Shown: positions 29,201 through 44,200, counted from the stretch's first letter. The stretch: DNA of 64,000 nt from Zootoca vivipara (GCF_963506605.1 NC_083285.1:7874001-7938000); one strand, 5' to 3'. Numbers and translations: made by a program. Notes: generated by a model from the letters alone, not told the origin.

Positions 29201-32200
29201 TAGAGACCAAATGGCCTAAATATAGAGAAATTCTGGTGGAGGAAGGAGACCAGTTAAGGTTAAAGACATATGAGCAGTTAAAAGGTAATATTGATGACTG
29301 GCTCCAATACCACCAGATAAATGAAATGTTTAAAATAGATAAAAAGATTGGTTTTGGATTAGAGAAATCTAAGCTAGAGACAGAAATGTTAGATCCAAAG
29401 ACAAAGAATCTTTCCAGAATGTATGATTTATTGCTACAGTGGCATTTGAAAGATGAACAGACAAAAAAAGTGATGATAGATTGGGCGAAGGATGTGGGAC
29501 ATAATATTATGATGGAAGACTGGGAAAGATTGTGGGGGAAAAACATGAAATTTACCGCGTGCACTGTGTTAAGAGAGAATATGATGAAAATGATGTATAG
29601 ATGGTATTTAACACCAGTGAAACTTGCTAAGATTTACCACAAACAGGACAATAAGTGTTGGAAATGCCAAAAAGCAGAGGGAACATTCTATCACATGTGG
29701 TAGACCTGTCCACTAGTTAAGGATTTCTGGGAAAAGATTTATAATGAGTTGAAGAGAGTGTTCAGGAACACATTTATTAAAAAACCAGAATCCTTTCTAC
29801 TGGGCATGGTAGGAAAAGAAATACCTTTAAAGGATGTGAATTTGTTTTTGTATGCCACAACAGCTGCTAGAATATTAATAGCAATGTACTGGAAAACACC
29901 AAAAATGCCTACAGTGGAAGAATGGCAAATGAAGATGATAGACTACATGGAGCTTGCTGATCTGACCGGAAGACTACGCAACCGGGGAGAAGAGAAGATG
30001 GAGGAAGAGTGGAAGAAATTTCGAATTTATTATGAAAAATATTGTAAAATTGATATTTGAAGAGTAATTTAAGCAAATATGGATGCTGCAGGTTAATGAC
30101 TTAGGAATTTTTACTTTGGAAATTTAGAGTGATAAACGGACTTTGATAGTAAAATACAAGGGAAATTGAAAAATGTATACAGGGAAAGAAAATAGGATTA
30201 GAATCTGGGAGGTTTGATATACAATGAACCGATAGAGGGGGACCTCGAGGAGGTCCATTATAGATAAGATAGAAAATTTGAAATATGATTAATGGTTTTT
30301 TCTTTCTTTTTTGTTTTTTCTTTTCTTTTTTCTGTGTCGTTTTTGATGTTGTGATTTTTTTTTTTGTATTTTTCTGTATTTAAACTTTGAAAACCTTAAT
30401 AAAAATGAATCAAACAGAAAATGTGATAAAACACAAAAGAAAAGTTGCAACGCAGCACAGATACTTACTGAATCAATCAATATGGATGACCGGGTCCCTG
30501 GATCAGAAGCAGAAGACTTGGAAAAATAGACATCTACAAAATATTCTGTTCCTGGTTCAAAGCATACAGCAGTCGGTAGCAGCTCCATTCTGTTTAATTG
30601 AAAAGTCAAAACAAATTAAAGAATTCTGTCATTCTTTCCCCTAGGTTTTATGATGCTCATTTGCTGGAGCTATTTGTGTGCATGAGTAATAGAACAGTAA
30701 CAGAAGAGAAATGACCAAGTGTTGGAAGACATAAGGGGAAAGGATGGCTTCTCCTTGGGTCGCCCCCCCCCCCAAATATCTTCTTTGAAGAAACGAACAG
30801 GTAATATACAAACCTTGATGTATATGGTAGAGCAAGTGAGTGTGGTTCTTGCAGGGCTGCTGTTTTCCCACAGTGTTCGCTTTCTCTAGAACCTGAAGTC
30901 TTTACAGCTATGCTTGCTATCCAGTCTTCTAAAGTCTACAGTATGTGTTTGGGAAGAAAAAAAAGTTGGTTTTCATACAAAGTTGAAACATGCTTGATTC
31001 TTTCCGTGCCTATAAACAAGAACATCTTGAGTTTATCTGACCAGGGAACAAGGAAATCTAGCATAAATACTCCAGTTTAACCAGAAATTTACACTTGTAA
31101 ATAGCTGGTGACAACTAATCCCTTTCTGCAATACACATACATGGCGTCCATACAAATGCAGATCCTAAGATTTGGGGATTATGCAGTGTCTGCATCTACA
31201 GTTCTATGATTTTCATACATTGAGAAATGTTTGCACCACAAAACTAATGAGTGCAAGGCATGTAGTGGTGACTATTAAGATGACAAAGATAAATTTGAAG
31301 ATCAGGATAACTTTTGTGGGGTTTTGTTCAATTATATTCCACATACACAATTTTAATATGGTCCATATTTTGCTTTACTTTGAAGTCTTTGCTCTTTTTT
31401 GAGGATTCGAATATGAGTTGAAACTACCCTGGGAAAAGTATGAAGTGTAACAATTACCTCTGGCTCATAGCGAATGATGATATTAAAATCCATCAGGAAA
31501 GGGATGTTGTTGACTGTAAATCGTAACCCCGCTCCATTCCGGACTCTTGCAAAACCCGGCCCTGACCATGTCACAGGTTTTCCAGGAACAGACCCTCTAA
31601 TAACAACATCCAGAGCAGGGTTCCTGCCAAACAGAATTGAATCCTGAAAGGAGAGATTTGCGTTTTAAATATCACATTTATTCAGGAAACAAAGTGAATC
31701 CTGTCTTGAATCCCCTCTTAGCCAGCGTAGCCACGAACTCTTTCATTTCCCCTCTTCAAAGCCTATTCTTGAGTAGAAGGTCCCTGCCAGTCCCATAAGT
31801 CCTTTGTGAAAAGGGAAGATGAGTTAGGCCAGCTTCAAGTTCAACAGTAGTATGAATAATTGAAGTTAGGCCACTAGGGCTTCTTACTTACAATCAGGGC
31901 AGATCTACACTCTAAGTTTATTAATGTTAAAAATGTGTTATTAAAACGTGACACCAGAGGGCGTTGCAGAGCAGTGAGCCACCACCAATGGGAAACTGCA
32001 TGAAACATTTTAAGCATTATTAAATATAACGTTCTAGAAGATCAATGTAGATCCAGCCACATTCCAGGAAATGGCTCGGCCTGTCAGTGTCCACCTTAGG
32101 GTCAATGTTGCCTTTACAGAACTCAGCAGGGAAGGGGATGGGGGACAAAGTCAGTGGGCTATGCCTTCCATTGGCCATTGTTGGCCTCCCTGTCTTCTGT

Positions 32201-35200
32201 TCCACCATTCTCCGTGAGCACCAACCACTACTGAGTATAGGTAGACAAAACAAATGAGAGGGGTGGCAAAGATGAGCAGGGGTTCTGCCTCCATCTAAAC
32301 CTAAATGGATGAGAAACACGGACTCCATATCCTCGTTTGTTTTGACACCAGGTGTAGACCCATGCAGATTCTCAAACCTTTATTGGCATATGTACAAGAT
32401 TCCAGTAGTGTTCAATACAATTAAACACCACTCATTAAAAAAAACTACCCTGCATGTAACAGTTAAGTTAGTGTTGTATAGCATTCACAAATACAGTCAT
32501 ACCTTGGAAGTCGAATGGAATCTGTTCCGGAAGTCAGTTCAACTTCCAAAACATTTGGAAACCAAAGCAGCCAATTGGAAGCTTCAGAAGCCCCGTCGGA
32601 CGTTTGGGTTCCAAAGAATGTTTGCAAACTGGAACACTCACTTCCGTGTTTGCAGCGTTTGGGAGCCAAAACATCCAAGTACCAAGGAGTTTGGGATACA
32701 AGGTATGACTGTACTCATTGAAACCTGGCTACTATCTCCATCCAGGTTATCAGCAATAATCCTTATATCTCAGCAGACTAACACATAATCAGGAATATGT
32801 GTGAACTATGCAGAACATAAATAGTTTTTAAATTTTTATTTTACACCCTTGATGTCTTAGTATTTCAGGCCAACATGTCAGTGCATTATGGTCAGATTAA
32901 TTACATTTCTTTGAGATATCTTATGTCTTTTGGAAATGTTAACAGCATTCCGAAGTCTTTCTTGGCGGGGAGGGGGAATAATTGCATAGGATTGGAATGA
33001 ATTACAGGAATGTCCCATTCATGAAGACTGCAAAATATGAGAAAGTTATGTACACAAATCAGACCAATGGTCCATCTAACCAAAAGCTGTCAATCTTGAC
33101 TGGCAGTAGCGAAAGATCTACAGGCTCCTAGTCCTCCTACCAGAGATCCAGGGATTGAATGAGGAACTTTATACATACAAACCAAGTGTCGGTAAATTCT
33201 CAAATCCTCTCACCAATAACCTAAGAGGTTACTCATTGTTTTGCACAAGCCATAAGCTACAGATAATGTGAAGTGACTCAAATAAGGCACATATATTATG
33301 GTTCTCCAAGGATCCTACCCCAGACTTTTAAGAGATGGGTTTCCCTTCCTTGAAATCCCTTACAAACCAATTAATGGGACATTAGTGTTACCTGTCCAAC
33401 AGTTGCTTTTCTTATGCTTCGTTTCTTGTTTCTGTTCAATACGATCTTTCCATTTTCAATTTTGAAATCATAACCTTGTTGCCGAAAATAGACATCACAC
33501 CATGGTAAAGCTGTGGGCTGAACCTTATAAACAGGTGTTTTAAGTGGTGGAAGTGTAAAAACGCTGGTTTTATTTGGGTTTTTTTAGTTGACACACAAAT
33601 ACAATCAAACAATGGACAACTGGGAAAGCAGTGAATCTGCATAATTAGTAGTCTAAACCATATATTATTCTCCATGTCAAGGAACTTTGTACTACTAACC
33701 TACTTACAAAGAGAACTCTGCTTAACTTGGGGTGGGGATCTAAATCCAAGAAAATCAAACTTGCACAACTATTGATTAGCTATGAAGTTTCATAACTTTA
33801 GGGCAGTGGTGCTGGGTAGATAATTGTGCTGTTTCTATTGTTAAACAATTGGGAGTAAAAGAAAAGAAATAATACTTGCCTATTTATTGCAAATCACCCA
33901 GAGATTTACCAGTAGATCCAGATCTACCTTCTGCCCACTGCCAGATTCCAGCATGCAGGTTGCTCACCAGGGCAAGACAATTTGAGCATATAACACCAAT
34001 CCTGGCCCAACCGCACTGGCTGCCAGTTAGTTTCTAAGCCCAATTCAGAGAGCTGACATTGACCCATAAAGCCTTAAATGGCTCAGGACTGCAGTACCTC
34101 AAGGATCTCCTCTATCCATGTGAACTGACCATGCGATCATCCTCTCAGGCCCTTATTCACGTGCCTCCTCAAAAGGTCTGGAGGGTGGCAGCATGAGAAC
34201 GGGCCTTTTTTGCAGTGGCTCCCCATTTGTGGAATGCTTTCCCCAAGGAGGCTTGCATGGTGCCAACATCCTTTATATTTAGGCGCCAGGCAAAAACTCT
34301 CCTCTGTAACCAGGTCTTTGGCCTTTACCTATCTATGACTATTTAGAAGTGCGCGGGATGTTTCTAATGTATTTCCTTTCCCCTTGGTTTTAATGTATCT
34401 TGTGTGAGGTTTCCTGTCTGTCTGTTTGGTTGGTTGTAAGTTGCTTTGGGTTGCCCTGGACAAGATAAAGAGACTAACTAACTAAGTATCGTAACTAACT
34501 AACTAACTAACAAACAAACAGAAACACAACTGTGCTTAAAAGTACATCTTACTACATCCCATACACGGACGGATTTTTGCGGTAACATCGTCTATAAATA
34601 TTGTAAATAACATAAATTAAAATATACTGCCATTCAATCAGTGTCTTTCATTCTTCCCCTCTCACTTCTGGTTCTGCTCTGAATCCCCTCTTTAGTTTTG
34701 ATCTATATTACCACAACTGCACTTTGAATATGGGAAAGGTAAAGGTAAAGGACCCCTGACAGTTAAGTCCAGTCGCAAACGTCTCTGGGGTTGCGACGCT
34801 CATCTCACTTTACAGGCTGAGGGAGCCGGCGTTTGTCCGCAGACATTGTTTCTGGGACACGTGGCCAGCATGACTATGCTGCTTCTGGCGCAACGGAACA
34901 GCAAAACCAGGGCAGCGCACGGAAACACCGTTTACCTTCCCGCCAGAGCGGTACCTATTTATCTACTTGCACTTTTTTGGTGTGCTTTCGAACTGCTAGG
35001 TTGGCAGGAGCTGGGACTGAGCAACAGGAGCTCACCCCGTCGCGGGGATTCGAACCGCCGACCTTCTGATCGGCAAGCCCAAGCGGCTCAGTGGTTTAGA
35101 CCACAGCGTCACCCGCGTCCCCTATGAATATGAATATGGGAAGTAATGCCAATTAAAATACCAAAGGTGAAGATCCTGGGAGTGGCATCGAGTCTTCTGC

Positions 35201-38200
35201 TTCATATATATAATAGTCCAAAGGTAAGAAGAAGTGGCCTGGGGCTGGCTCAGAACACTGACGGCCCACAATGTTCGGAAGGCACTCACACTGGCCATTA
35301 GTAGGTGTGCACCTAGCAGAAAAGAGAGGAAGGCGAAACAGTACAAAATCTGCACAACCATGGACAAATGCTATACATCACAATACATTCTTTCTTTATG
35401 TTTGTATTATTATTGCCCTATATTAGCAGAGGAGTCCCTGCTTGAATCTTCTAATCCATAAATTCACTCTTGCAATTTCCAATGACTCTAATGGCAAAGG
35501 GAAAGAAGGGCAAGAATCTGCACCACTTTCAGTGGGAGTTTGTGGTACAACGTTTCTTAGATGTTAAATAAGACATTTGAAACGGGAAATCATAGACTTA
35601 CAAGTTATTGTGGGCACCACCAATGTCACAGCCACAGGGAGAACATCCGTGTAGATTGCTCCCAAGGCCCCAGTATCCTTGCTGTAGTAAAATAAAAAGG
35701 GAAACCAGTTAACCCCATTTGACATTAAAAACCGTTTTACTTACTGAACCTTTTGATTCCATTCTCCAGGGGTGGAGAACCTGTGGCCCTTCGGATCTCA
35801 TTAGGCTCCAGCTTCCATGATCTCCAGCCAGTATGGCCAATAGGGCTAGAAGATGGAAAATGAAGTCCAGCAATATCTGGAGAGTCATAGGTCCCCCACA
35901 CCTGCTAAGGAACATTGAGCGTATGAACAGATTAACATGGAAAGGCATGCAGGTGGGCGGCACTTGCTGGGTTGAATTTCCCGGCTTTCAGTCCTAGAAC
36001 AGACTCCCACCCTCTCCAAAAGTGGCATGTCCAAAACCCATAACCTAGCAGCAAACCACGTTTCTTCGTTTCCCTCTATGGCAGTACACTAACTCTGATC
36101 CCTGTTTCCTTAGCAATTTGTAAAAGACAAAGAATTCTCAGATGAATACCACGGATTGCCACTTTGACCTTTGCTTCATCACTTCCACAGCAGAAGAGAT
36201 TTCTCAAAAGGCAAAAGACAAACCCACAGGAACCTTTGTCAACACATAATACTGCAGTATCTGTCTCTGAAAATCTCGCAGGTACCTACAGGGCATTCCT
36301 CGCAATGTCGCCCACTGGCAAACCGCTGGCACAGACACTCTCCAGTCACTGGGTTGCAAGCAGAGAAAGACAAGCTTCCTGAAGGGTTGCAGTTGCAGGC
36401 TGAAAGGACACAAAGCACAATCGCCATCTCCGTGAGGCTCGCTTCACATGCAGCGGGGATGAGCCCTCAGTAGAAATAAACCTTCTAAGGCGGAAAATAA
36501 TAATAATAATTTATAATAATTATAATAATTATTTATTATTTATACCCCGCCCATCTGGCTGGGCTTCCCCTGCCACTCTGGGCGGCTTCCAACAAACATT
36601 AAAATACATCAAATATCACAGATTATTAACTTCCCTAAACAGGGCTGCTTTTAGGTATTTTCTAAATGTCAGGTAGTTGTTTATCTCTCTGACCTCTGAT
36701 GGGAGGGTGTTCCACAGGGCGGGTGCCACTACCAAGAAGGCCCTCTGCCTGTTCCCTGTAGCTTTGCTTCTCGCAGTGAGGGAACCGCCAGAAGGCCCTC
36801 GGCGCTGGACCTCAGTGTCCGGGCAGAACGATGGGGGTGGAGACGCTCCTTCAGGTATACTGGACCGAGGCCGTTTAGAGCTTTAAAGGTCAGCACCAAC
36901 ACTTTGAATTGTGCTCGGGTTTCCGGGTCACCTTCAAAGGTAGCCCCACATAGAGCGCATTGCAGTAATTCAAGTGAGAGATAACCAGAGCATGCACCAC
37001 TCTTGCGAGGCAGTCTGCAGGCAGGTAGGGTCTCAGCCAGCGTACCAGATGGAGCTGATAGACAGCTGCCCTGGACACAAAATTGACCTGTGTCTCCATG
37101 GACAGCTGTGAGTCCAAAATGACTCCCAGGCTGCACACCTGGTCCTTCAGGGGCACAGTTACCCCATTCAGGACCAGGGAGTCCTCCAAACACTGTCTGC
37201 CTCCAGTGACCTTCATTCCAAGGACAGAAATCCCAAGGGATGTGCTGGCAGGACACCTGATCTCAAGAAATGGGTGTACATAACAATATATCGTTTTGAA
37301 AAAGCCATGGAATACAGTGGACTTCTATTTGCTATGTATTTCCTGTGGCTATTCATGACACTTTTGCAAATGGCAGCTAGGGTAATATGCACAGCTACCG
37401 TAGGGGATGTAAAAGATCATTTCCTCCCTTAATTTCCTCTGAGTTTTATAATACAGCTTTTGCTTTAAGGACGGGGAGGGGGGGGAGTTCTACAATCCCT
37501 TGGTTGCAGTATTGAGCCAATGAAGTCACTGTGGCCTGGTTAAACCATAGTTTGCAGCAAGCCATAGTTCAGTGCGAATGAGCTGCATACTAGTGTGCTC
37601 CTTCTCTTTGCCTGCAACACCACAGTGAAACAAGCAAGAGTCTGGCTTTTTGTATTGCCTTGACCTGGGCTTGCAGTTTCTCCTGCAGGAGCAGGGGAGG
37701 AGTACCACGGGAACTCTAGAGCAGTGTTCACCAGCATGCTTGCGTTTGCCAACACCTTGAACTAAGGTTTATTTCAAACTATGGTTTAATGTGACGTACA
37801 GACTGAGCCACAGTTTTAAGGCAGGTGTGTTCTGATAATCAAAGCCTTTAATGGGGGGGGGGAGAGAAAGAAAGAAAGAAAAACATACGCTGACAGCCAA
37901 GAGGATCACTTCCACTCAGCCCATAGTAGTTTGGCTTGCACTTGTCACAATGAACTCCTTCAACGTTTTCCTTGCAGTGGCATCGGCTGGCAATGGTTCC
38001 AAGAAATGGGTCTGTACGATCCTCGCACAGCCCACTGTACAATGTACCTTCAGGGTCACATTCACAAGCTATGGACATAGATAGGCAGTCACAGATGTAA
38101 GTGGAAAGCAGTTAAATGGCAGCATTCACAGGCTGGAAATGTTAGCGAGTATTGCAATAGTCAGCTTTGATACAGCTAAACTTACCCCTACACCCTTTTA

Positions 38201-41200: not shown

Positions 41201-44200
41201 GACAGTGAAGGCTGTCGTTAACAGCCATCTACAGGTTTACCACTCCCATCAGCCCATCACCCATTCCCGTCACCCCCACCCTCTGAATATACATAAGGGT
41301 TTGGTGGATTCTGTTTCAATGTATCTGACGAAGTGTGCATGCACACGAAAGCTCATACCAAAATAAAAACTTAGAAGGAATTTTTTTATTTTGCTTCGAC
41401 TCAGACCAACACGGCTACCTACCTGAAGACTGGATTGCTCAACTTAAATGATTCTAACGAATCCATCAACTTGTTTCCAGCAATCTGCAAGGGAATGTGT
41501 TCTGCTGCTTGCTCACTAGCGTGAGTGAGGAGGGATAATATTTACAGTAACCAATATATCCTCTCCTACTTTCCTCAACGTTTCAACAAAAACAACACTT
41601 AAAACCATTTAAAAGCATATGCGAGCACACAGAAGTACAACACCCGCTCTCTGAAGGCCCTGCCACAACGGTCAGTTAGTGGCAAAAATCCTGCCTTTGC
41701 ATGCCTGCAAAAGGAAAATGGAGAGCCCAGCCTCCTGTGAAAGGAATTCCCCAATTCTGGGAGCAGCAACTGAACATAGCTGCCAAGTTCCGGCCTGAGA
41801 AATAAGGGACTGGACCGGAAGTAGCAGACCAGAAGTAGCGCTGCCGCCATTTTGGAACTGGGCGGAGCATGCTCAGAAGCTACTTTTGATGCTGCTCTGC
41901 CCTGTTCCAAAATGGCTGCCACACCAGAAGTCATTTTGGAACTGGGCAAAACAGTATCAAAAGTCACTTATGAGCATGCTCTGCCCAGTTCCAAAATGGC
42001 CGCCGCACCAGACTAAACCAGGGAAAAACAAAAAAAATCCGTTTTTTCGGCTGGGGACAGCTGGAAAAACTGGGATTTCCCGGGGAATATGGGAGACTTG
42101 GCAGCTATGCAACTGAAGGTGATGGGACTGGGAGAAAGACCTCCCAAGAAGATCTCAAAGATATGGGACAGGCTTCAGCAGAAGTGTTCTACTTTCGCAC
42201 AACACACCTTCTGAGCAAGAGACATCTATCCAAGCGACATGATCTTGGCAATTTAGCAGCAGTGCTCTTAGACGTCCACAAGGATTTGTGCCAATTTTTC
42301 TCACCCACAAAAATGGAAGGTTTCCCAGGGTGAGGAACCTCGTGGATTACATTTGTCACATACTGTTCACTGCTTACACGCAAATGCTTCTTACCCAAAT
42401 CTTTATTGTCTTTTTTTTATAAAAGCGACTTCTTCCTAAGGTAATCAGCCCAATCTACACTCACATAGGATGCATCATAATTGGGGAATTCCAAGATCTC
42501 TGCTGGATCACAGTCAGCTCTCAAGTTCTGGCAGCTAATTGGATTAAAAGGGGAACTTCTCACCTTATTGATGTAAACCTCCAAAATGTATTTTGTATAG
42601 TTAAGTTTCTACCTCTATCTTCAGTACATTTTATATTATTTTATTGCTATGGCTAGTGGCTGATGCAAATAAAGATTCTTCTGATCTGATCTGACCATCA
42701 ACACATACAAAAAAGGGTCATTATCAGCAAGGTTGGAGAACCCGCCCCCCGAGGTTTGCAGAAGTACAAAATGGTGGTGTTGGGGGATGACCCCAAAACA
42801 GTCCAATAAAAAGCAAGCATGACTGGGGCCCACAGAATGCCAATTTAGGCTGCATACATGCCATACTTTTAAACCACATACAAAGCACCATTTTCTCCCT
42901 GTACAATACAAAGCACTGTAGTTTTTTTCTGGGATGCTGGGACTGGAACTGTGAGGGGTAAAATTATAGTGTTCAGAATTTGGCGGGGGGTGGGGGAGTA
43001 GAGAAATAGGCTTTCAATGTGCTTCAAAGGAACAGTGCAGACACAATCTTACTTTTAGTGACAGTGTTAGAGAAGCGAACAGAAAAACATAATAAATGGA
43101 ATGGAATATGTTGGGAGAGGGCATTAGTGACTGGCTGGCACCATGAATAGGGGCATTTCCCACAAGAACATTTTGCTGCAGGTTGCATTTGTAGAGGAAT
43201 AATTTTTACATTTTTCAATCATTGGTCACTTCCCTCTCTCTTTCTTTCTTATACAAGCTACTCTAGGCAAGTTAAGAATTATTGCATTTATCTATAGAGA
43301 AACAATTCAAGTGTACACACAGCACTGGCTATTAACTGAATTATATCCGCATAATTACAGCTGTGGCATTTTCCTGCTATTAGCCAAATGTGATCTAATT
43401 ACTCTTAGGAATATCGCTGCAGTACCTTACAGAAGCTGGATTCTTTTTGCCTCTAATAAAGTATCAAGAATTAGAAGATTTGTGACGTACCATTCCAGGC
43501 TCATGGAAAACATCACCCCTCAGATTTTGCACAGGCCCACAATAGCTGGCATGACCATTGCAAAAACAGCTTCCGCGAACAATCATCTCGTAAAGCGCAT
43601 AGTAGTATTTTTCCAGAGGATCACGCCGCTTTTGTCCGAGTAAAGTATCGCCAAGCGTGTGAAGCTTAGTAAAGTTTATTCTCAGATTTGTTAAGGTAGT
43701 GAGCTCTGTGAGCAAGGGACAATAAATAATTGGTTAATTGACCTCAACATTGAGTTGATGCAATTCAAGCGCAGCAACAGAGATCATTCAGGGTATGACT
43801 TAAGGGTTAATTCTGTTCTTAAATGGTGGAGGCAGAGGTGTTGCTTAGCAACCAGGTGGAGTGGCATGATCTTTGCTGAGCTAGCACATGTTCTGATTGG
43901 ATGTCTCCCCGCTATGTACAAGGTCTGAACTGAGAAAGGCAAAACCTCTTTGCTTCTTTCTCCTCAAGTTCTACGCCGTTTTTATTCAGTTTTGCGCAGT
44001 AAAGTGGGTTCCCCCCCTTTCTCTCTGAACTGTCTGTTTTATTTAGGTGATTTGCTAACAATATGAACATACAATGCTGCCTTATATATCAAGTCAGACA
44101 TTTGTCCCCACCATGCCTAAGATTGAATACTTCAGATGGCCATGGCCCTCCAGAGTCTTCTCCACCCTCTCTACCTTGCTCCATCACAAAATTCAACTTG

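What the first reader, a model, noticed from the sequence alone, without database searches (positions are those of the whole stretch)
33392..33523. Extra LAMB4 exon with a lone cysteine and polybasic convertase-like site: possible shedding of a netrin-4-like LN-LE fragment
Seen: a 132-nt phase-0/0 open exon (aa 572-615, [44 protein letters not shown]) with a CTTAA branch-like motif, AG acceptor and CAG|gtaaca donor. It sits between ...[14 protein letters not shown] and DSILFGRNP..., at the start of the LF domain, and can be skipped without frameshift. Recalled, not verified: human LAMB4 joins the equivalent exons directly, LAMB1/2 have no such insert, and teleost Lamb4 has a similar Arg-rich insert. 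Established: proprotein convertases cut after dibasic or R-X-X-R sites, and netrin-4 (beta-type LN-LE) binds gamma1 LN and disrupts laminin polymers. Inference: KKR|S (604-607) or RSIR (606-609) could be cut to release or loosen a ~600-aa LN+LEa short arm, giving a splice-switchable regulator of basement-membrane polymerisation lost in humans. Cys580 has no obvious partner and could cross-link. The site is not a strict furin R-X-K/R-R.
Basis: partly seen in the sequence, partly recalled or inferred. Interest (0 to 1): 0.8.

Follow-up and report, generated by a model that had tools for sequence, protein, structure and literature searches.

The report
Conserved LAMB4 exon, already annotated
The 132-base stretch is a real, expressed coding exon of the lizard laminin beta-4 gene, but it is an ancient exon already annotated from sharks to many mammals (absent from primate gene models), and nothing found here supports the idea that it lets the protein shed its tip.

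Summary
Observation confirmed. Window 33392-33523 (minus) is a 132-nt phase-0/0 exon. Spliced transcript contigs from three studies join it to the neighbouring exons at exactly the predicted GT..AG borders, at the depth of the flanking exons. No skipping joint was seen.

It is not "extra". The window is Zootoca vivipara LAMB4, and RefSeq isoform X1 (1812 aa) already holds this peptide as residues 572-615. The same 44-residue exon is annotated in squamates, a turtle, birds, frogs, lungfish, sharks, rays, teleosts, marsupials and many placentals. Primate models and many other mammalian models lack it. Horse and chicken have both forms annotated.

It inserts into the beta1-beta2 loop of the LF domain, next to the Ca2+ ligands. 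The cysteine is present in every exon-bearing sequence aligned, and a LAMB4-specific cysteine (C772) is a candidate partner.

The basic cluster is conserved outside mammals. Strict furin motifs occur in teleosts and frogs but in 0 of 20 squamates. AlphaFold gives a weakly confident helix-hairpin followed by a low-confidence basic tail.

A cut there would nick a folded beta-sandwich, as furin does in laminin alpha2 LG3, rather than release a netrin-4-like arm. Cleavage is untested. Interest is low to moderate.

The parts
35162..35312 (-). Upstream LAMB4 exon: the end of LE5, LF strand beta1 and the Ca2+-ligand motif YEAED, ending ...PLPGSSPL.
   Evidence: PF00053 EGF_laminin; aligns to 5LF2 beta2 chain residues 19-58. 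Spliced contigs.
33392..33523 (-). The 132-nt exon (aa 572-615 of Zootoca LAMB4 isoform X1): [44 protein letters not shown].
   Evidence: both junctions in transcript contigs. One search shows an exact match in RefSeq P0319, P0315 and P0318. Searches show the orthologues.
33524..33525 (-). AG of the acceptor. A second AG 6 nt inside the exon (acceptor at 33517) is used in one Ensembl Podarcis muralis model.
   Evidence: P0199 lacks the first two residues, VQ.
33390..33391 (-). GT of the donor (CAG|gtaaca).
33497..33499 (-). Codon of Cys580, present in every exon-bearing sequence in the alignment.
   Evidence: Cys in 57 of 57 aligned sequences with residues at that column, including the three non-LAMB4 beta chains..
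33407..33433 (-). Basic cluster R602-K610 (RNKKRSIRK). It holds KKR, RSIR and the only XBBBXXB pattern in the protein.
   Evidence: The AlphaFold pLDDT is about 40 for the equivalent stretch.
31458..31643 (-). Downstream LAMB4 exon: LF strands beta2 onward ([17 protein letters not shown]...IRYEPE).
   Evidence: 5LF2 chain residues 63-115; PF21199 LAMININ_IV_B, E 9e-15. Spliced contigs.

Best explanation
SHOWN: this is an ordinary coding exon of laminin beta-4 (LAMB4) of the common lizard Zootoca vivipara. It was included in every transcript contig examined. It is conserved from cartilaginous fish to many mammals and is already in RefSeq. It adds 44 residues to the beta1-beta2 loop of the LF (laminin IV type B) beta-sandwich, directly after the Ca2+-binding Glu-x-Glu motif. 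Laminin beta2 has 4 residues at that point; lizard beta-4 has 63.

INFERRED:
- The first ~27 residues ([24 protein letters not shown]) form a small helix-plus-hairpin module on the LF surface.
- This module is probably stapled by a disulphide between Cys580 and the LAMB4-specific Cys772.
- The last ~17 residues ([15 protein letters not shown]) form a flexible, exposed polybasic tail.

My preferred reading (about 45%) is that the tail is a docking site for sulphated or acidic ligands, such as heparan sulphate or sulphatide. It matches the XBBBXXB heparin-type pattern in most sauropsids.

A proprotein-convertase nick at KKR|S or RSIR|K is possible (about 30% in lizards, more in teleosts and frogs). 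It would leave the two halves held together by the sandwich and probably by the disulphide, as in furin-cut laminin alpha2 LG3. It would not shed the LN-LEa arm.

Mammals have lost the charge, and primate gene models lack the exon.
For: - Exon reality and constitutive inclusion.
- Identity with RefSeq Zootoca LAMB4.
- Orthologue distribution.
- Position in the LF fold: alignment to 5LF2; PMC5338690: Glu573 and Glu575 are in the beta1-beta2 loop; LE5-LF-LE6 is compact and buries about 1600 A2.
- Selection: the exon core is 79%, 92% and 74% identical within squamates, birds and mammals, against 73%, 85% and 70% for the rest of LF.
- Cysteines: Cys580 is present in every exon-bearing sequence. 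LF has six Cys, four of which match the two beta2 disulphides, leaving C580 and C772.
- Charge: mean K+R in the 24-residue tail is 7.0 in squamates, 5.9 in birds and 8-9 in fish and frogs, against 2.7-3.5 in mammals.
- XBBBXXB occurs in 45 of 57 sauropsids, occurs once in the whole Zootoca protein, and has a chance rate of 0.0012 per 24-mer.
- Snakes keep lysines while losing arginines (KKIKKKGIGK). This favours charge over a protease motif.
- AlphaFold on the Bombina orthologue: LF core pLDDT 83-89; insert helix 590-596 and hairpin 601-610 about 60; basic tail 611-630 about 40. The same elements appear in the poorer first model.
- Precedent: alpha2 LG3 RRKRR sits in a long loop of a beta-sandwich, is cut by a furin-like protease, and the cut lowers heparin affinity (PMC2755686).
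Against: - No biochemical data of any kind. Ligand binding, the disulphide and cleavage are all inferred.
- C772 is missing in 4 of the 54 exon-bearing LAMB4 sequences in the alignment that keep Cys580 (Myotis, Erinaceus, two sharks). It is kept in exon-less primate models, so the pairing is not proven.
- The near-invariant KKR-x-[IV]-RK register across birds, turtle and lizards is stricter than a mere charge patch needs. That could point to a protease or another specific reader.
- Contigs cannot exclude a minor skipping isoform in this lizard.
Confidence: 0.5

Rival explanations
1. Convertase nick without release. Furin, PACE4 or PC5 cuts the exposed tail (KKR|S or RSIR|K in sauropsids, RX[KR]R runs in teleosts and frogs). 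This gives a two-chain beta-4 that stays assembled, and the cut tunes ligand binding or flexibility, as in laminin alpha2 LG3.
For: Strict R-x-[KR]-R occurs in 3 of 4 teleosts and 2 of 2 frogs. R-x-x-R occurs in 35 of 36 birds and 16 of 20 squamates. The tail has low pLDDT and is probably exposed. The register of KKR-x-[IV]-RK is conserved. There is a precedent in alpha2 LG3.
Against: 0 of 20 squamates and 1 of 36 birds have the strict furin motif. P4 is Asn or Ser at the KKR site, and P1' is Lys at the RSIR site. Crotalus and Liasis lose the arginines but keep lysines. There is no protein evidence.
Confidence: 0.3
2. One reading: cleavage at the basic site releases or loosens an LN+LEa fragment of about 600 aa that acts like netrin-4 on laminin polymers, switched on or off by splicing.
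For: The exon is skippable in frame, and both forms are annotated in horse and chicken. A basic cluster is present.
Against: The site lies inside the LF beta-sandwich, after strand beta1. LE5 packs on the LF helices and on LE6, burying about 1600 A2. A candidate C580-C772 disulphide would bridge the cut. No skipping was seen in the lizard contigs. Squamates have no canonical furin motif.
Confidence: 0.04
3. A structurally tolerated loop expansion with no specific function of its own. The charge and cysteine are kept only for folding or secretion of the LF domain.
For: Mammals have lost the charge, and many mammalian models drop the exon without losing the gene. Other beta chains carry unrelated inserts in the same loop.
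Against: The exon core is at least as conserved as the rest of LF across the whole range from cartilaginous fish to mammals. The Cys is present in every exon-bearing sequence aligned. The XBBBXXB pattern is far above chance.
Confidence: 0.15

Closest known systems
RefSeq laminin subunit beta-4 of Zootoca vivipara (XP_034982369.1, isoform X1) and its vertebrate orthologues
   Same: The three exon peptides of the window occur letter for letter in this protein. The exon is residues 572-615. Orthologous 44-residue exons occur from sharks to horses.
   Different: Nothing differs. The window is this gene. Primate and many other mammalian models, and chicken NP_001186242.2, lack the exon.
Laminin beta2 LE5-LF-LE6 crystal structure (PDB 5LF2; PMC5338690)
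   Same: The same LF fold, the same Ca2+ ligands (E-x-E after beta1) and the same two LF disulphides by alignment.
   Different: Beta2 has 4 residues in the beta1-beta2 loop where lizard beta-4 has 63. Beta2 lacks Cys580 and Cys772.
Furin-type cleavage loop RRKRR in laminin alpha2 LG3 (PMC2755686)
   Same: A polybasic stretch in an unusually long loop of a laminin beta-sandwich domain. Processing there changes heparin affinity. By background knowledge, the processed chain stays assembled.
   Different: A different chain and a different domain (LG rather than LF). The alpha2 site is a strict furin motif and is shown to be cut. The beta-4 site in squamates is not strict and is untested.
Netrin-4 (beta-type LN-LE protein that disrupts laminin networks)
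   Same: Its domain make-up resembles the LN-LEa part of a beta chain (established knowledge, not tested here).
   Different: Netrin-4 is a separate gene product. No evidence was found here that beta-4 yields a free LN-LEa fragment.

Membership tests
Laminin beta chain LF domain (laminin IV type B, PF21199) | Profile match of the LF sequence | tested here: met
   The downstream exon matches PF21199 with E 9.1e-15 and 55 bits against a cut-off of 27. It also matches 5LF2 beta2 with E 1.3e-6.
Laminin beta chain LF domain (laminin IV type B, PF21199) | Truncated LE5 followed by the beta1 strand and the Ca2+-ligand E-x-E motif | tested here: met
   The upstream exon aligns to 5LF2 residues 19-58, including the EAE motif. 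The ligands are named in PMC5338690.
Laminin beta chain LF domain (laminin IV type B, PF21199) | The two conserved LF disulphide pairs | tested here: met
   C699/C727 and C785/C801 fall in columns that are invariant in 62 of 62 sequences.
LAMB4 orthologue group | Exact or near-exact identity to annotated LAMB4 | tested here: met
   All three exon peptides are contained in Zootoca RefSeq LAMB4. Lacertid relatives differ by 1-3 residues.
Cassette (alternatively spliced) exon | Length a multiple of three with the frame preserved on skipping | tested here: met
   132 nt, phase 0/0.
Cassette (alternatively spliced) exon | Both inclusion and skipping junctions in the same species | tested here: inconclusive
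   Only inclusion joints appear in three contig runs, and the raw-read run had no LAMB4 reads. All Zootoca RefSeq isoforms retrieved carry the exon. Both forms are annotated in Equus and Gallus.
Proprotein convertase (furin-type) substrate | R-x-[K/R]-R consensus at the site | tested here: not met
   Zootoca has [10 protein letters not shown]. Counts are 0 of 20 squamates and 1 of 36 birds, against 3 of 4 teleosts and 2 of 2 frogs.
Proprotein convertase (furin-type) substrate | Minimal motif ([K/R]-R or R-x-x-R) in an exposed flexible segment | tested here: met
   KKR and RSIR are present. The equivalent tail has pLDDT of about 40 between confident LF strands. This is a prediction of moderate quality.
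Proprotein convertase (furin-type) substrate | Demonstrated cleavage product | not testable with these tools
   No protein-level data. The searchable literature held no paper linking LAMB4 and furin.
Netrin-4-like released LN-LE regulator | A free LN-LEa fragment not tethered to the rest of the chain | not testable with these tools
   Structural context argues against release, but no direct test was possible.

The most novel reading that the evidence does not exclude
The LF domain of ancestral gnathostome laminin beta-4 carries a dedicated, disulphide-stapled polybasic processing or docking loop. It is a strict furin site in teleosts and frogs and a weaker KKR-x-[IV]-RK site in sauropsids. The loop regulates how beta-4 laminins bind sulphated ligands or are nicked. 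It has decayed in mammals and has been dropped from primate transcripts. That would give the enigmatic LF domain its first assigned function.
Probability: 0.25. Interest if true: 0.5.

Novelty: already known. Interest (0 to 1): 0.25.

Why it matters
As a sequence feature it changes nothing. The exon is in the public annotation of this species and of most vertebrates.

Its modest value is comparative. It shows that the primate form of LAMB4 is the derived, exon-less one. It also shows that the LF domain, whose function is called enigmatic in the structural literature (PMC5338690), carries in beta-4 a conserved cysteine-bearing module and a polybasic tail at the Ca2+-site loop.

That gives a concrete handle for testing LF function: the exon present or absent, K/R>A mutants and C580S. 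The obvious model for such tests is a non-mammal, or a mammal that keeps the exon, because rodents lack the gene (PMC13615688).

Tried and rejected
- **Chance ORF.** The intron holds 40 comparable open AG..GT candidates, so sequence alone proves nothing. Rejected by the spliced contigs and the orthologues.
- **Exonised repeat.** Contig depth over the exon equals that of the flanking exons, unlike the neighbouring repeat at 34616-35151 with depth up to 1.5e5. The exon is also conserved to sharks. Rejected.
- **Known domain in the 44-mer.** Pfam gives nothing. PDB gives only a spurious Pcc1 hit with E 0.011.
- **Homology with inserts at the same loop in other beta chains.** These are shark "beta-1", eel and lamprey "beta-2-like", which share a Cys and some Arg-rich stretches. 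A profile built from 93 LAMB4 inserts finds nothing in them, so homology is not shown.
- **Extra conservation of the exon between the two lizard labels.** My first reading was 0 differences. That was wrong: the exon contig has 3 other letters in 134, similar to the flanking exons.
- **AlphaFold on the quail fragment P0004.** The result was poor (mean pLDDT 51), partly because that gene model is flawed inside LF. I repeated it on the Bombina protein.
- **Raw-read RNA run X19.** It had no LAMB4 coverage, so no junction counts were obtained.
- **Joined gene model.** Searches were done exon by exon by reference, and the database protein P0319 served as the full-length sequence.
- **Human sequence.** No human sequence or contig was fetched or compared. 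The primate statement rests on non-human primate cluster representatives.

Full report
**What is there.** The minus strand of the window carries a laminin beta-type gene running from about 56000 to below 10000. The window contains no N runs. It is preceded by ...ttataag and followed by gtaaca. The neighbouring exons end at 35162 (...[14 protein letters not shown]) and start at 31643 (DSILFGRNP...).

**Is it more than chance?** Not on sequence alone. The 3518-nt interval between the flanking exons holds 40 open, phase-0/0 AG..GT candidates of 90-300 nt.

**Transcript evidence.** The decisive evidence comes from transcripts.
- In run X8 a single 4050-nt contig runs 35312-35160, then 33521-33391, then 31642-31458. 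The skipped stretches have CT..AC ends on the + strand, which is GT..AG on the gene's strand.
- In runs X1 and X5, which carry another organism label and come from two other studies, contigs of 1696 and 1660 nt carry the 35160>33521 joint.
- X1 also holds the exon as a 134-nt contig at depth 71, against 74 and 53 for the flanking exons.
- No contig shows the skipping joint 35162>31643.
- Contigs drop rare variants, and the one raw-read RNA run laid (X19) had no reads on this gene. A minor skipping isoform therefore cannot be excluded.
- An early impression that the exon was unusually conserved between the two organism labels was a misreading. Its contig differs at 3 of 134 letters, much like the flanking exons.

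**Which gene and whose.**
- The downstream exon matches Pfam LAMININ_IV_B (E 9e-15), and the upstream exon matches EGF_laminin.
- I searched the downstream exon against the 50%-identity representative library. Word searches then started from two of the representatives it returned, and cluster look-ups followed.
- All three exon peptides occur letter for letter in RefSeq "laminin subunit beta-4" of Zootoca vivipara: P0319 = XP_034982369.1 (1812 aa), and also P0315 and P0318.
The exon is therefore already annotated in this species.
All searches were exon by exon by reference, and P0319 served as the full-length sequence.

**Distribution of the exon.** The same exon lies between YEAE and the TW[ST]G motif in annotated LAMB4 of the following groups:
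- about 20 squamates;
- a turtle;
- more than 30 birds;
- two frogs;
- a lungfish;
- six sharks and rays;
- four teleosts;
- three marsupials;
- about 20 placentals, including horse, cats, fox, bats, pangolin, armadillo, hedgehog and hippopotamus.

All six primate cluster representatives lack it (Papio, Callithrix, Eulemur, Propithecus, Carlito, Otolemur). So do many other mammalian models and a few older or Ensembl-type bird and reptile models.

Where the same genome has several models, the exon behaves as a cassette. Equus isoform X1 is 1791 aa and X2 is 1747 aa, differing by exactly this exon. Chicken XP isoform X1 has it, and the curated NP_001186242.2 lacks it. All Zootoca isoforms retrieved carry it.

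Tetrapod beta2 has no insert, teleost Lamb4 has an Arg-rich homologue, and primates lack the exon. But the exon is the ancestral state, not an addition. I did not fetch or compare any human sequence.

**Conservation.** Within each clade the first 27 residues of the exon are at least about as conserved as the rest of the LF domain, and more so in amniotes.

| Clade | Exon core identity | Rest of LF identity |
|---|---|---|
| Squamates | 79% | 73% |
| Birds | 92% | 85% |
| Mammals | 74% | 70% |
| Fish and amphibians | 50.5% | 50.8% |

The basic tail is a little less conserved. The cysteine is present in all 57 sequences that have residues at that alignment column.

**Where it sits in the fold.**
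- The upstream exon aligns to residues 19-58 of the laminin beta2 LE5-LF-LE6 crystal chain 5LF2, ending at the EAE motif.
- The downstream exon, from its residue 10, aligns to chain residues 63-115.
- Beta2 thus has 4 residues where lizard beta-4 has 63. These are 10 from the upstream exon, 44 from this exon and 9 from the downstream exon.
- According to the structure paper (PMC5338690), the two glutamates of this motif are Ca2+ ligands in the beta1-beta2 loop of a 10-stranded, CBM35-like sandwich.
- The same paper reports that LE5 packs against the LF helical region and against LE6, and that about 1600 A2 is buried.
- The insert is therefore a surface excursion of a folded domain, not a linker between domains.

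**AlphaFold.** I ran the Bombina orthologue with 101 aligned sequences (mean pLDDT 71).
- The LF core is confident (pLDDT 83-89).
- The insert is modelled as a short helix and a hairpin at pLDDT of about 60.
- The basic tail has pLDDT of about 40.
- A first, poor model on a flawed quail fragment showed the same secondary-structure elements.
- Coordinates are not returned, so distances could not be measured.

**The cysteine.** LAMB4 LF has six cysteines. By alignment, C699/C727 and C785/C801 are the two beta2 disulphides. The remaining two are C580 in the exon and C772 (VENLC). C772 is LAMB4-specific and absent from beta1- and beta2-like chains.

A C580-C772 bond is the obvious hypothesis, and it would bridge the basic site. 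It is not proven. C772 is replaced in Myotis, Erinaceus and two sharks that keep C580, and it persists in exon-less primate models.

**The basic cluster**.

| Clade | Mean K+R in 24-residue tail | R-x-[KR]-R | R-x-x-R |
|---|---|---|---|
| Teleosts | 8.2 | 3 of 4 | 4 of 4 |
| Frogs | 9.0 | 2 of 2 | 2 of 2 |
| Chondrichthyans | 7.8 | 1 of 6 | 4 of 6 |
| Squamates | 7.0 | 0 of 20 | 16 of 20 |
| Birds | 5.9 | 1 of 36 | 35 of 36 |
| Placentals | 3.5 | 0 of 20 | 1 of 20 |
| Marsupials | 2.7 | 0 of 3 | 0 of 3 |

- In mammals acidic residues replace the basic ones.
- Rattlesnakes and a python replace arginines with lysine, glycine or asparagine (KKIKKKGIGK, KKNGIRK, KKKGIRK).
- The sauropsid motif N/S-K-K-R-x-[IV]-R-K matches the heparin-type pattern XBBBXXB in 45 of 57 sequences.
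- That pattern occurs nowhere else in the 1812-residue Zootoca protein and has a chance rate of 0.0012 per 24-mer.

**Mechanism.** The exon's reality, its age, its place in the LF loop and its conservation are shown. The rest is inferred.

I favour an exposed polybasic docking loop for sulphated or acidic ligands, carried on a small cysteine-stapled module (about 45%). A convertase nick is a serious rival (about 30% in lizards, higher in teleosts and frogs).

The two readings need not exclude each other. In laminin alpha2 LG3, an RRKRR sequence in an unusually long loop of a beta-sandwich is cut by a furin-like protease, and the cut lowers heparin affinity (PMC2755686).

The site lies after strand beta1 inside the sandwich. 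LE5 is packed on LF and LE6. A probable disulphide spans the site.

**Literature.** Full-text searches found the LF structure paper and recent LAMB4 papers. None mentions this exon, LAMB4 isoforms at this site, or LAMB4 processing. This scan's earlier notes hold nothing on this exon.

**Verdict.** This is a correct observation of an already annotated, ancient exon. The shedding idea is unsupported. Novelty: already known. Interest: low to moderate.

Noticed in passing
window 34616-35151: A very high-copy repeat in the intron directly downstream of the upstream exon's donor. Summed contig depth in the transcript runs reaches about 1.5e5, and there are many variant letters. It looks SINE-like to me from memory. 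ARAGORN finds no tRNA in it.
   Followed up: partly
window 32472-32739: A second, moderately repeated intronic element, with contig depth up to about 2400.
   Followed up: no
window 33517-33523: Tandem acceptors 6 nt apart (ataag|gttcag|ccc). One Ensembl Podarcis muralis model (P0199) uses the inner one and lacks the first two residues, VQ. The contigs here use the outer one.
   Followed up: partly
window 36732-37324, minus strand: Long open frames with a reverse-transcriptase-tail-like sequence (...[18 protein letters not shown]...) in the intron upstream. Probably a LINE fragment.
   Followed up: no
P0012 (Heterodontus 'laminin beta-1'), P0047 (Anguilla 'beta-2-like'), P0040 (Petromyzon 'beta-2-like'): Other vertebrate beta chains carry inserts in the same beta1-beta2 loop of LF, each with one Cys. 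The shark and eel inserts also have long Arg-rich runs. A profile of the LAMB4 insert does not detect them, so common origin is open.
   Followed up: partly
P0177, P0180, P0169, P0324 (Elgaria, Tiliqua, Erythrolamprus, Anolis carolinensis X1): Some squamate models carry 5 extra residues (VPVYK, VFEYK, ASVYK) just before the exon. This suggests an acceptor 15 nt upstream in those species. Zootoca has no AG at that place.
   Followed up: no
Zootoca LAMB4 residue C772 (exon outside the finding; P0319): A LAMB4-specific sixth LF cysteine (VENLC). It is present in 54 of 62 aligned chains and absent from beta1- and beta2-like chains. It would be unpaired in exon-less isoforms.
   Followed up: partly
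window 41321-41358: The scan's index holds a first-reader note of a minimal hammerhead ribozyme in a Penelope-like fragment in another intron of this gene. I did not examine it.
   Followed up: no
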